A stretch of 63,599 bases of DNA, filler included, from Reticulomyxa filosa (lineage: Eukaryota; Protista; Foraminifera): assembly GCA_000512085.1 (NCBI GenBank). It is 28 parts of 28 records of this genome, joined end to end, with 100 filler letters (N's around TTAATTAATTAA, not from the genome) between each part and the next. Parts side by side here need not be neighbours in the genome. Positions count along the whole stretch, not along the records: positions 29,485 to 32,298 come from ASPP01000433.1; 27 more parts are not named here. One strand, written 5' to 3'. Positions within the stretch are counted from its first letter, which is position 1, and every line of letters starts with the position of its first letter. The translations under genes and the position numbers were made by a program. Below are positions 29,485-35,871 of this stretch, piece by piece. The notes below the pieces were generated by a model, which was not told where the DNA came from, searched no databases, and worked only from the letters and a program-made list of their open reading frames with translations.

Positions 29485-29652
29485 ACAATGATTCACAAAA
29501 AAGGACCATTTAATACTGCTGAAGAAATTTGGAACAAGTTCGAAACAGAATGGGAAAAAATAGAAACAAATATTCGAGAAACCTTAATAAAGTCGATTCC
29601 AAAGAAAATGCAGGCAGTTAAAAAAGCCAAAGGAAATATAACACGTCGGTAA
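29485..29652 (+). mobile_element. Tc1/mariner-family transposase C-terminal fragment
   Basis: EEIWNKFETEWEKI...RETLIKSIPKKMQAVKKAKGNITRR* matches the Tc1 C-terminal pattern W..I....LI.SMP.R..AVI.AKG..T.Y. Confidence 0.7.
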
Positions 29653-29777
29653 ATTCATTTTTTAAAAATAGTACTGAGTAAGATTGCAAATATTTAGATG
29701 TGGAGATAGTGAATCTCTTCGTATTGGGTAGCTATGAATGAGCAGATAAAGATACCAAAAACAACAGCAATACATGC

Positions 29778-32274
29778 TCACGTAAGATTAAAAACAGAAA
29801 CGATTGGCAAATGATCACTGAACCAGTTAGAATTAGGAAAGGGTGAGAGCCCGTCGTCTGGAAGGACAATACGAGACTCAACAGGTGTCAATACGCCATA
29901 AGCTTTGTTGGTATTTGTATAAAAAATGTAATCTAAGACCCCTTCAAATCCTCCCGTTTTGTTGGTGAATTTGCACTCCAGTTGATGAGAATGGGAGTCA
30001 CTCCAACTGCACTCAAAACCATCTTTAAATGGACTGAGAAAGACGATATCTTTCCAAAAGTAAGTGTGCAAACAAGGCAAGCATTTTTGCAAAGGATGTT
30101 TTTCACGATCTTCGGCCAGTTTTTTTCATCCTCAAATTTTATTGCTGAAAAGATGTTTTCAAATCTTTCCGCCTCTTTTTGTGTCTTGCCCCCCCACCAA
30201 TACATTTGCTTACACGTGACGCATTGATAAAATGACAACTGTCTACCCTCCTCATCAACTCCGTTTTTCAGTCCCTCCGGAATCGCGTCACTATCATGTA
30301 CCGCGTCGCTCTGAATACTAGAAAACGAGCCATTGCACAATGAGCATCTAATTTATATGTTAAATACAAACAAACAAAAAAAACAAAGTAAATAAATTAT
30401 ATACATATACACATATATGTGTATGTATATATTTCAATTACCTTGTGAACAGAGCTTGTTGGTCATATGAAATACCGAAATACTGAATCAAATACTGCAA
30501 GTTGAGAATCATATCATTAGAATGCAGAAACACATGAGGAGGGCAATCTCTTCTGGCTGCCAACTGTTTGGACTTAGTGATTAAATACCGACCCTGCTGT
30601 TTTGCAACATCGAACAATTTTTTGCAATCACGAGCCAAGGACGATTGACTTTTCGACCATTGTTTTTTATTCCCCGATTTTGATTCATTCTTGTTGCCAT
30701 TGGCGGTTGTTTCTTTAATTACAGACGCATATGCCTGCGACGTAGCACTTTCATCGTCGTTGTTATTTTTATTCGCACTTTCATTTCCATTTGCATTCGC
30801 ATTGTTATCTTCTCTTTCTTCATTCTCTTTTCTATCATCCTTTTTCTTTTTCTTTCCAGTAGTAGATATGGACGGCATGGACATGGACGAAAGAACGTCA
30901 TTTTTTTCGTCCACGATTGTGTTGATGGGCTTCTCAACTGTGGTGGGGTCAAAAAACTCATTATTTGCGTTTGTCGGATCAAAAAATGTAGTGTCTACAC
31001 CAATGGCCCGCATCCATCGAGCCAACTTATTCAAAGAGGGGTCCATTATCAATTTCAGCTCCGAATTGCCATGCGCCTTCATTGTGTGCGTTCCTTTTGC
31101 CAAGTACTGAAATGCACCGCTCCCAGGAATTGCATTGAAGTCACCTTTTTGTGCATACAAAATACACAGATATATGCAAAATCTTTCCTTAACAAAAAAA
31201 ATATATTTATATACATATGTATATAATATAATAATATAAATGTATATTACATAATAAATATATATACATATACATATATATATATGTATATGTATATATG
31301 TTGCATGCTCGAATTGGTTGCACATTATTAAAACAAAAAAAAAGTTTAAAGATGCGAAAAAACAACACAACAAACCGGTAAGTAAGATAGAAACATTTTG
31401 AATGTTTTGATCAGTATGCATAATTTGAGAGGCAACATAATGCAGGATATTAACAATATATGCACATTGTCGCAATCGGACGTCTCCTTTCAACCAGTGG
31501 TAGTACAAATGGCACGTGCAAAACAAAATCACGTGATTGGGCCTGTGTTGAAGCAACACAAACGAGGCGACGTTATCTCTACGATAATGATTTTGCACAT
31601 TCGTCGAGGTGCACGCATCCGCCAGATCGTTCAACTCAATAGTCATTGGGTTCGAAAAGGTCGGAAATTTCTTGTCCGTATCATACATCGCAAAATGTTT
31701 CTTTGACCATAGCAATAGACAACCTTTTTTTTTTTTTTTGCATAAAACATACATATGCATATGTACATATATACATATATGCATATATGTTTATTATATT
31801 TTTGTCAACAGAAAAAAATACCATCAGTTTTTTGTCTTGTTCTTTTTGCATAATAGTAATGATAACGATCTTGTAGGGCATTATGATGTCGGTGGGGTGA
31901 TCGACTTCTTGCAATGCGATAAGCTCACTGTTGCATGCGCTCAGAAATTGCAATAAATGAGTCAATCGTTGCTCCCATTTGAGTTGATCTGTTGGGCAGT
32001 ACGGATATTGCTTTGGACTGCAGTACTCGTCGGACAATATATTCAATGTTGTCACACGAAATCGAAACGATTTTTCGTCGTGCTTTTGCTCCATTAATGA
32101 GTCGATATGCTCCAAAGAGCGTTTCAACTTTTCAGATAGTCTTATTGCCAATTGCTTTTCCCCTTTGCTTTCACTGGAATCATTCTTTCCTTTGGGTGAT
32201 TGTTTCGTTTTTTTTTTTTTTGAGAGACGTGACACAAGTTTTGCATTAGTACACAAGCAAAAATTTGTTCGCAC
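29778..32274 (-). CDS. CCR4/nocturnin/angel-family EEP nuclease with an inserted Mut7-C RNase module (multi-exon; frameshift at A-run near 30120-30126)
   Basis: EEP: RVTTLNILSD.Y..YPYC...LKWEQR, LIALQEVD, GCLLLW, RRDNVA, TCHLYY, GDFNA.P, FTNKT..F.GVLDYIFY, PN..W.SDHLP. Mut7-C: IMDPSLNKLARWMRAIGVDT, AKQQGRYLIT, FTRCSLCNG, FYQCVTCKQMYWWG. Confidence 0.85.
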
Positions 32275-32398
32275 CGTGTGTGATTGATATATTTTGTTNN
32301 NNNNNNNNNNNNNNNNNNNNNNNNNNNNNNNNNNNNNNNNNNTTAATTAATTAANNNNNNNNNNNNNNNNNNNNNNNNNNNNNNNNNNNNNNNNNNNN

Positions 32399-34378: not shown

Positions 34379-35871
34379 CAATACCAACATCAATACCAAT
34401 ACTAACAACATCATAAATAATAACATGTTCAAAAAAATGTGTAAATCTTCTCACAATTTCCGTGTCTTGTCGTACAATTGCTTGGCACCTATTTATTGTA
34501 ATGAACATGCTTATCCTTACGTGAATTCGCACGTGTTGAACTGGGATTATCGAAAGTATAATATCACGCGTGAAATATTGCGCTATTGTCCAGACATTAT
34601 TTGTTTGCAGGAAGTGCAATTGAATCATTTTGAGGAATTCTTTCAAAAAGAGTTTCAAGAACACAATTACGAAGGCATATTTCGAACAAAAACTCGAGAT
34701 TCGATAAGGGAAAAACGATCAATTGACGGATGTGCCATTTTCTTTAATAAAAATCGATATGATGTTCGCAGTCGATATCACGTGGACTTCAATGAAACTG
34801 CCCGACAATATCTGGCTCAGCATTTCCATTTGGACCCCAAAAACATTCCCAAAGATACCCAGCATCCATGTCGACAAATGATTCGACGTTTGCACAAAGG
34901 CAACGTTGCTTTGATCTTGCTATTGACAGAGAAAACCAATTCGGCATATGACCACCCTCACGAACTGATTGTGGCTAATACACATATGTACTGGGACCCC
35001 AAGTTCACCGACGTCAAAGTGTGGCAAACGTATATGCTGTGCAAAGAATTGCAAAAGCTGCGAGCCCTGGGCCACAATGCGCCTATTGTTCTGTGTGGTG
35101 ATTTCAACAGTGAGCCATCATCTGCCGTTTATCAAATTTTGGTTCAATCCAAAATCGACAAGACAGCGTATAATGTTAAGTTGGTGTCTTCACGAATAAC
35201 AATACAAATTGTTTTATGCACGTACAATCATGTGCATATATTATGGACATAGATACACCATATTGTAAATAGATTAATTAATTAAATAATTCAATAAATA
35301 TATATATATATATATATATACATATATATAAAAAGGAATTAATTAAAGAATATGGCGAACAAAATATTCCATCCTTGGAAGAATTACAACATGAACTAAA
35401 CTTTGTGAGCGCGTACACGAATGAACCGAAATACACTAATTACACCGCACATTACAAAGGCACTCTAGACTATGTGCTGTATTCGAAAGAAAAACTCTCG
35501 TGTCTCAGCCATTTGGAAGAAGTGGAAGAAACACAGCTTTCCAAGGAAATGGCATTACCCAATTCGGTGCATTCTTCTGACCACGTCCCTCTGATGGCCG
35601 AGTTTGGGTATAACGATGATATCAAATCTTTTCACAATGATTTGTCCAACCAACATCAACAACAGCAGCCGTTGTTTCAGTCGAATTCACCAAACAATCA
35701 CATTTCAAAACGTGGCAACGATGATAAATTGAAAATGAAAGCAAAGCCAATTTTGTCGTCCCAAAATACAGCGTCTGCTGCTACTGCAGTTGTATTGAAC
35801 AGTAAAAATCCCAAAGATTTGGTATCTTCTTCAAATCAGTCCAGCTCTGGTCACAATCACAATCACAATCA
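34379..35871 (+). CDS. CCR4: CCR4/CNOT6-type deadenylase (EEP domain), partial; intron about 35184-35335
   Basis: FRVLSYNCLA..Y...YPY....LNWDYRK, DIICLQEV, IDGCAIFF, KGNVAL, VANTHMYWDP.FTDVK.WQ, LCGDFNS.P.SAVY, EP.YTNYT..YKGTLDY, LPN..SSDH.PL.AEF. Confidence 0.9.

What the first reader, a model, noticed from the sequence alone, without database searches (positions are those of the whole stretch)
29778..32274. Mut7-C (PIN plus Zn-ribbon) RNase module nested inside a CCR4-family EEP nuclease
Seen: the EEP motifs run normally to GDFNAIPGSGAFQYL, then a full Mut7-C set follows (DPSLNKLARWMRAIGVDT; AKQQGRYLIT; FTRCSLCNG; FYQCVTCKQMYWWG; about 31060-30190), and only then the closing EEP motifs (FTN..F.GVLDYIFY; SDHLP). 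The canonical CCR4 at 34379-35871 has only a short loop at the same position, which is an internal control. Known: Mut7-C is normally standalone or fused to the DEDD exonuclease of Mut-7/EXD3/Nibbler, which trims small RNAs. Inference: a Nibbler/Mut-7 analogue in which an EEP deadenylase or 3'-phosphatase replaces the DEDD domain, possibly acting in small-RNA or transposon silencing.
Basis: partly seen in the sequence, partly recalled or inferred. Interest (0 to 1): 0.8.

Follow-up and report, generated by a model that had tools for sequence, protein, structure and literature searches.

The report
CCR4-like nuclease with nested MUT7-C domain
This Reticulomyxa filosa gene encodes a CCR4-type RNA 3'-end nuclease with a MUT7-C RNA-binding module inserted in one surface loop; the layout is real and shared by many protists, databases already list it, no paper found here has studied it, and this copy carries two frame breaks.

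Summary
The piece is one whole 2814-bp Reticulomyxa filosa contig with a minus-strand, four-exon gene. Pfam finds Mut7-C above threshold in two exons. The switch from the nuclease (EEP) domain to Mut7-C lies inside a single exon.

- There are three AT-rich GT-AG introns.
- There are two frame breaks, at about 31885-31879 and at the A7 run 30126-30120. Each looks like one missing base. They could be assembly errors or a recent pseudogene; I could not decide.

The layout is not unique. An exhaustive HMMER search found 72 other cluster representatives. Of these, 35 show N-terminal EEP, then Mut7-C, then C-terminal EEP, and 21 more are fragments of that layout. Named members come from Rhizaria, stramenopiles and a euglenid, and the ESM Atlas holds a 120-member, mostly diatom cluster. 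No paper in the searched library describes it.

A complete homologue folds confidently. Its EEP halves reassemble into a CNOT6L/PDE12/ANGEL2-like fold, and the insert's only significant structural match is the MUT-7 C-terminal domain (8Q66).

The insert most likely binds RNA rather than cutting it. A role in small-RNA pathways is untested.

The parts
31822..32094 (-). Exon 1, from the candidate ATG at 32094-32092. It carries the EEP N-terminal motifs (TLNIL, ALQEVD). The frame stays open upstream to the contig edge, so the true start is uncertain.
   Evidence: Family profile positions 33-107 and 112-131; tblastn with relatives.
31879..31885 (-). Frame break 1. Relatives align in one frame up to 'HPTDI' and in the frame shifted by 2 nt (equivalently -1) from 'ALQDRYHYYYAKRTRQKTDG'. 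There is no room for an intron, and C4 and C3 runs lie next to it.
   Evidence: The phase-1 donor G|GT at 31822/31821 only works in the second frame.
31724..31821 (-). Intron 1: 98 nt, GTATTT...AG, phase 1, GC 0.18.
   Evidence: tandem AT-rich repeats and an A15 run.
31376..31723 (-). Exon 2: the EEP core (GCLLLW ... CHLYYH ... ILLTG).
   Evidence: Family profile positions 131-236, E 4e-29.
31145..31375 (-). Intron 2: 231 nt, GTTTGT...AG, phase 1, GC 0.19, containing an (AT)n array. The deposited model reads through it.
30442..31144 (-). Exon 3: the EEP GDFN motif followed, in the same exon, by the N-terminal (PIN-like) part of Mut7-C.
   Evidence: Pfam PF01927 at 42.3 bits; family profile positions 236-367, E 5e-42.
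30639..30950 (-). Loop of about 105 residues rich in Lys, Asn, Glu and Asp inside the Mut7-C N-terminal part, absent from relatives. Its composition is exon-like, so it is probably coding.
   Evidence: Unaligned insert; GC 0.39-0.44.
30348..30441 (-). Intron 3: 94 nt, GTAATT...AG, phase 2, GC 0.16. It splits the Arg codon in front of the first CxxC.
30191..30346 (-). Mut7-C zinc ribbon: CSLC at 30346-30335, CVTC at 30223-30212, then YWWG.
   Evidence: Pfam PF01927 at 27.8 bits; family profile positions 368-441; all four Cys are invariant in the family.
30120..30126 (-). Frame break 2, at an A7 run. The zinc-ribbon frame ends at '...KFEDEK' and the EEP-tail frame begins at 'KLAEDREKH...'. A run one A longer would join the two frames.
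29778..30122 (-). Rest of exon 4: linker and EEP C-terminal motifs (FTN, LDYIFY, SDH), then the TGA stop at 29780-29778.
   Evidence: Family profile positions 510-579, E 4e-17; tblastn with P0002, P0003 and P0004.

Best explanation
The contig carries a Reticulomyxa filosa member of a widespread protist protein family. In this family a CCR4/Angel/PDE12-type EEP domain (a Mg-dependent enzyme acting on RNA 3' ends) has a complete MUT7-C module (a reduced PIN-like domain plus a zinc ribbon) inserted in the surface loop after the GDFN strand and helix.

Shown:
- The two EEP halves are both present, with every catalytic motif residue intact.
- In a complete relative the two halves fold back into one EEP domain around the insert.
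- The insert is a true MUT7-C by sequence and by fold.

Inferred:
- The EEP domain is the catalytic part.
- The MUT7-C insert does not cut RNA. It adds an RNA-binding surface that holds single-stranded RNA and feeds its 3' end to the EEP site, as the MUT7-C domain does for the unrelated DEDDy exonuclease in MUT-7 and EXD3.

The protein lacks the LRR region that docks true CCR4 onto the CCR4-NOT complex, so it probably works on its own. Its substrate is not known; candidates are poly(A) tails, 2',3'-cyclic phosphate ends, 2'-5' links or small RNAs.

The Reticulomyxa copy has two one-base frame breaks. These are either homopolymer errors in the assembly or recent inactivating deletions.
For: - Organism and contig.
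- Motifs and exon structure.
- Pfam Mut7-C above cut-off in two exons.
- Ten relatives each show EEP profile positions 1-173 followed by Mut7-C; an EEP C-terminal hit appeared explicitly for P0002.
- 35 complete and 21 partial nested proteins among the 72 non-self HMMER hits.
- Single uninterrupted ORFs in relatives. Transcript-derived ORFs.
- AlphaFold2 model of relative P0004 has pLDDT 84.7 and pTM 0.82. Foldseek aligns it across both halves to CNOT6L (TM 0.73-0.74 by target), PDE12 and ANGEL2.
- By sequence, the nearest solved proteins to relative P0007 are yeast Ccr4, ANGEL2, PDE12 and CNOT6L.
- The insert alone folds at pLDDT 93. Its only significant PDB match is the MUT-7 C-terminal domain 8Q66 (E 5e-4). 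The insert profile against 8Q66 gives E 2.6e-10.
- 'LTRD' of standalone Mut7-C is 'T-x-S/N-K/R' in the nested family, and the matching C. elegans MUT-7 stretch likewise has Ser-Lys ('TVPSK').
- In MUT-7 and EXD3, removing the C-terminal domain lowers RNA affinity 6-8 fold, and constructs lacking it degrade RNA less efficiently. The isolated domains served as negative controls in the RNase assays and bound RNA only weakly: PMC11347159.
- No LRR hit in exon 1 or in ten relatives.
Against: - There is no transcript or read evidence for Reticulomyxa; no RNA run was listed. Splicing and the frame breaks therefore rest on homology and composition alone.
- The two frame breaks may mean this copy is dead.
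- The joined spliced protein was never searched or folded. Folding was done on a relative whose best alignments to the window's exon pieces show 36-46% identity.
- Three acidic positions of the PIN-like site stay conserved in the family: Asp286 in 25 of 29, Asp302 in 28 of 29 and Glu326 in 25 of 29 (P0004 numbering). A second nuclease activity is therefore not excluded.
- No biochemical data exist for any member.
Confidence: 0.7

Rival explanations
1. The Reticulomyxa copy is a recent pseudogene. The two one-base frame breaks are real deletions, so no full-length protein is made from this locus, although the family is functional in other organisms.
For: - Two independent breaks occur in about 1.9 kb of coding sequence.
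- The contig ends in what looks like a transposase tail, which fits a repeat-rich neighbourhood.
- No transcript support could be obtained.
Against: - There is no in-frame stop in any exon segment.
- All EEP catalytic motifs and all four zinc-binding Cys are intact, and the splice sites are canonical.
- Both breaks are of the same kind (one base short) and lie at or beside homopolymer runs. The second falls exactly on one of only three runs of 7 or more in the exons. This pattern also fits homopolymer under-calling in a draft assembly. That the assembly used pyrosequencing is my recollection and was not checked here.
Confidence: 0.4
2. The insert is an active PIN-like endoribonuclease, making the protein a two-headed enzyme that cuts RNA internally and then trims the new 3' end.
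For: - Asp after strand 1, the Asp of 'GxD' and a Glu are conserved in 25-28 of 29 family members.
- Pfam names the domain an RNase, and the PIN classification paper says activity depends on the species (PMC5499597).
Against: - The Asp of 'LTRD' in standalone Mut7-C is Ser or Asn followed by Lys or Arg in all 29 aligned members, and the matching C. elegans MUT-7 stretch also has Ser-Lys.
- Isolated MUT-7 and EXD3 C-terminal domains were the negative controls in RNase assays.
- No Mut7-C nuclease activity is reported in the papers read.
Confidence: 0.15
3. The nesting is an annotation or assembly artefact: two genes, or a chimeric contig.
For: The contig is short, and the deposited gene model is poor.
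Against: - The GDFN motif and the Mut7-C start share one exon with no stop between them.
- The same order is seen in 35 complete proteins from independent sources, including single ORFs on 2.3-kb and 518-kb contigs and Trinity transcripts.
Confidence: 0.02

Closest known systems
MUT-7 / EXD3 (the Nibbler family): DEDDy 3'-5' exoribonuclease with a C-terminal MUT7-C domain
   Same: - Both pair a 3'-end RNA-degrading catalytic domain with a MUT7-C module of the eukaryotic 'T-x-S-K' type and a four-Cys zinc ribbon.
- The insert's only significant structural match is the MUT-7 C-terminal domain 8Q66.
   Different: - The catalytic domain is an unrelated fold (EEP, not DEDDy); no PF01612 hit was found.
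- MUT7-C is nested inside the catalytic domain rather than appended.
- There is no MUT-8-binding beta-sheet insert. Reticulomyxa instead has a low-complexity loop at a different position.
CCR4-like EEP enzymes: Ccr4/CNOT6/CNOT6L, ANGEL2, PDE12, Nocturnin
   Same: - The same fold and the same catalytic motifs.
- These are the best sequence and structure matches.
   Different: - No LRR (CCR4), no ANGEL2_N region and no PDE12-like N-terminal domain.
- The short loop after GDFN is replaced by an insert of about 250 residues (MUT7-C plus a long helix).
- Which chemistry it performs (deadenylase, 2',3'-cyclic phosphatase or 2'-5' phosphodiesterase) cannot be told from sequence.
[quoted passage not shown]
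   Same: The same nested layout. These are the true family of the window's gene.
   Different: These are only machine labels. No paper in the searched library links Mut7-C with CCR4 or describes the family.

Membership tests
EEP superfamily, CCR4-like branch (PF03372) | The conserved catalytic motif set: Asn in '..LN[IV]L', Glu in 'LQEV', Asp and Asn in 'GDFN', Asp in 'LDYIF', and Asp-His in 'SDH'. | tested here: met
   All are present in the exon translations. GDxN, the Asp of DYIF and SDH are invariant in 29 relatives. Pfam scores of the separate pieces are below cut-off.
EEP superfamily, CCR4-like branch (PF03372) | A complete EEP fold formed by the two halves. | tested here: met
   Tested on relative P0004, not on the window's joined protein. 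pTM is 0.82 and TM is 0.73-0.74 to CNOT6L, with the alignment spanning both halves.
CCR4 proper (Ccr4p/CNOT6/CNOT6L, CCR4-NOT subunit) | An N-terminal leucine-rich repeat that docks onto CAF1. | tested here: not met
   No LRR family hit in exon 1 or in ten relatives. The family profile starts with the EEP domain. Only 204 nt lie between the candidate ATG and the contig edge.
Mut7-C (PF01927) | A Pfam score above the gathering cut-off. | tested here: met
   42.3 and 27.8 bits against 23.3. Relatives reach E 1e-29.
Mut7-C (PF01927) | A four-cysteine zinc ribbon at the C-terminal end. | tested here: met
   CSLC and CVTC are present. All four Cys are invariant in the family.
Mut7-C (PF01927) | The fold of the solved MUT-7 C-terminal domain. 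| tested here: met
   Tested on relative P0004, residues 268-440. 8Q66 is the only hit with E below 0.001. The insert profile against 8Q66 gives E 2.6e-10.
Catalytically competent PIN-like nuclease | A full set of acidic metal-binding residues. | tested here: inconclusive
   The first Asp, the 'GxD' Asp and a Glu are kept. The Asp of 'LTRD' is replaced by Ser or Asn.
MUT-7/EXD3/Nibbler | A DEDDy 3'-5' exonuclease domain (PF01612). | tested here: not met
   No such hit in the window's pieces or in ten relatives.

The most novel reading that the evidence does not exclude
The nested EEP::MUT7-C family is an independent second pairing of MUT7-C with a 3' exonuclease. It would then do in diatoms, rhizarians and euglenozoans what MUT-7 or Nibbler does in animals: trim or turn over small-RNA 3' ends in silencing pathways.
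Probability: 0.12. Interest if true: 0.7.

Novelty: new variant of a known kind. Interest (0 to 1): 0.42.

Why it matters
- MUT7-C was given its first function only in 2024, as an RNA-binding helper for the DEDDy exonuclease of MUT-7 and EXD3.
- The same module sits inside a structurally unrelated 3'-end enzyme in at least three eukaryotic supergroups. This is independent evolutionary support for the idea that MUT7-C is a general RNA-holding accessory for 3'-end processing.
- The finding points to a large, unstudied protist enzyme family, abundant in diatoms, whose substrate is open to direct testing.
- For Reticulomyxa it corrects a truncated and mis-spliced deposited gene model.

Tried and rejected
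- **Mini-intron explanations for the exon 4 frame switch.** I considered a 26-nt intron (30001-29976) and 62-nt or 95-nt introns ending at 30012. I rejected them because relatives align without a gap on both sides of the A7 run.
- **Continuing the zinc-ribbon frame to '...MVLSAVGV' as the EEP 'SAY' motif.** Rejected: relatives match the other frame from 30122 onward.
- **A phase-0 donor for intron 1 in the first frame.** This is incompatible with the acceptor. It was resolved by the frame break in exon 1.
- **The deposited model P0001.** Rejected as a gene model: it reads through intron 2 and ends at the intron 3 donor.
- **Word-index protein searches** found only the queries themselves or a few close relatives.
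- **The Atlas feature search** on exon 3 gave nothing.
- **No RNA run was listed**, so read laying was not used and neither splicing nor the frame breaks could be checked.
- **The joined spliced protein** has no reference, so it was not searched or folded. Exon pieces were used by reference, and a complete relative was folded instead.
- **Rfam** found nothing in the piece.

Full report
**What the piece is.** Positions 29485-32298 are one whole 2814-bp contig of the foraminiferan Reticulomyxa filosa. The deposited product is 'carbon catabolite repressor protein, partial' (605 aa) and matches the contig at 100% identity. That model reads straight through an AT-rich intron and stops just before the zinc ribbon, so the nested layout is not visible in the public record.

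**Gene structure.** The gene lies on the minus strand. I placed the exons by tblastn with relatives and by scoring each exon piece against a profile of 29 full-length relatives.

| Part | Coordinates | Notes |
|---|---|---|
| Exon 1 | 32094-31822 | from the candidate ATG |
| Intron 1 | 31821-31724 | 98 nt, GC 0.18 |
| Exon 2 | 31723-31376 | |
| Intron 2 | 31375-31145 | 231 nt, GC 0.19 |
| Exon 3 | 31144-30442 | |
| Intron 3 | 30441-30348 | 94 nt, GC 0.16 |
| Exon 4 | 30347-29778 | includes the stop |

- All three introns are GT-AG, have matching phases and contain AT-rich simple repeats. The exons have GC 0.41.
- The six exon pieces cover the family profile in order: positions 33-107, 112-131, 131-236, 236-367, 368-441 and 510-579.
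- I searched the exon pieces separately by reference.

- Pfam Mut7-C passes its cut-off in exon 3 (42.3 bits) and exon 4 (27.8 bits).
- The EEP GDFN motif and the start of Mut7-C lie in the same exon with no stop between them. The zinc ribbon and the EEP tail share exon 4. The nesting is therefore not an artefact of joining two genes.

- There are two frame breaks. Relatives align in one frame up to 'HPTDI' (31885) and in another from 'ALQDRY...' (31879). The second frame is the only one compatible with the phase-1 donor of intron 1.
- In exon 4, the zinc-ribbon frame ends and the EEP-tail frame begins exactly at the A7 run 30126-30120.
- Both breaks behave as one missing base, and there is no room for an intron at either. 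No exon segment contains a stop, and all catalytic residues are intact.
- This fits either homopolymer under-calling in a draft assembly or very recent deletions. No sequencing run was listed, so I could not decide. I put a true pseudogene at about 0.4.
- Reticulomyxa also has a loop of about 105 residues rich in Lys, Asn and Glu (30950-30639) inside the Mut7-C N-terminal part, which relatives lack. Its exon-like composition suggests it is coding.

**The layout is a family, not a one-off.**
- An exhaustive HMMER search with exon 3 against 1.84 billion cluster representatives gave 72 non-self hits at E up to 0.001.
- Using three sub-profiles, 35 hits show N-terminal EEP, then Mut7-C, then C-terminal EEP. 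Another 21 are fragments with the EEP N-terminal part directly before Mut7-C.
- Pfam on ten of them gives EEP profile positions 1-173 followed by Mut7-C.
- Named members include:
  - Rhizaria: Lapot gusevi, Amorphochlora amoebiformis, Leptophrys vorax
  - stramenopile: Mallomonas annulata
  - euglenid: Ploeotia vitrea
- IMG labels several metagenomic members 'Ccr4/uncharacterized protein with PIN domain'.
- A structure search of the ESM Atlas finds a 120-member cluster, mostly diatoms, automatically named for both domains.
- Relatives are encoded as single uninterrupted ORFs or as complete transcript ORFs.
- In a tree of the Mut7-C modules, nine of twelve modules without an EEP partner form one well-supported clade. 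The other three are short proteins inside nested clades and are probably fragments. One origin of the nesting is compatible with this tree but not proven, because the tree is unrooted.
- No paper in the library contains both 'Mut7-C' and 'CCR4'. The ten papers that mention Mut7-C describe only standalone, ubiquitin-fused or DEDDy-fused forms.

**Fold.**
- The close complete relative P0004 comes from a Tara Oceans metagenome contig. Modelled with the family alignment, it gives mean pLDDT 84.7 and pTM 0.82.
- Foldseek aligns the model across both EEP halves to CNOT6L (TM 0.73-0.74 by target), PDE12 and ANGEL2. The alignments span about 598 columns against targets of about 335 residues, so they bridge the insert.
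- By sequence, the nearest solved proteins to relative P0007 are yeast Ccr4, ANGEL2, PDE12 and CNOT6L, with Nocturnin further away.
- The insert modelled alone has pLDDT 93. Its only significant PDB match is the C. elegans MUT-7 C-terminal domain 8Q66. The insert profile hits 8Q66 at E 2.6e-10.

**How it probably works.**
- The EEP catalytic set is intact, so the EEP domain is the likely active site.
- No LRR is present, so this is not a CCR4-NOT-docking CCR4.
- In the insert, the first PIN-like Asp, the 'GxD' Asp and a Glu are conserved. The Asp of 'LTRD' in standalone Mut7-C is Ser or Asn followed by Lys or Arg in all 29 aligned family members, and the matching C. elegans MUT-7 stretch also has Ser-Lys.
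- Busetto et al. 2024 (PMC11347159) report three relevant results:
  - The isolated MUT-7 and EXD3 C-terminal domains served as negative controls in the RNase assays and bound RNA only weakly.
  - Removing the domain lowers RNA affinity 6-8 fold.
  - Constructs lacking the domain degrade RNA less efficiently.
- I therefore infer that the nested MUT7-C is an RNA-binding arm that presents a single-stranded 3' end to the EEP site.
- The substrate and pathway are unknown.

**Verdict.** The gene is a Reticulomyxa member, possibly broken, of a widespread protein family that databases list but no paper found here describes. The family pairs MUT7-C with a second, unrelated 3'-end nuclease fold. Interest is moderate.

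Noticed in passing
window 29488-29652 (+): A 54-codon ORF is cut by the contig edge and runs convergent to the nuclease gene. From memory, its pattern resembles the C-terminal tail of Tc1/mariner-type transposases. Pfam gave nothing significant. The Atlas feature search gave only unnamed clusters, with a weak nearest named cluster carrying DDE_3.
   Followed up: partly
P0008 (954 aa, ENA metagenome protein): This family member carries three tandem Mut7-C modules nested between the EEP halves.
   Followed up: partly
window 30086-30048 (-): Just after the linker, 'KCLPCLHTYFWKD' weakly resembles the second zinc knuckle 'QCVTCKQMYWWGG'. The closest relatives keep 'LPNLQRFFW' without the cysteines. 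It may be a decayed duplicate of the knuckle or a clade-specific motif.
   Followed up: no
L002:1-9917 (ENA soil-type metagenome contig, 518 kb): Family member P0066 is an intronless ORF tightly flanked by a 1380-aa UvrB/UvrC-like fusion gene and a protein of more than 8000 aa. The organism is unidentified. The gene spacing looks compact, so whether this member is eukaryotic was not established.
   Followed up: no
window 31201-31299 and 31753-31789: Introns 1 and 2 consist largely of (AT)n and ATATGCAT-type simple repeats, and intron 1 ends in an A15 run. This explains why the deposited model could read through intron 2 without a stop.
   Followed up: partly
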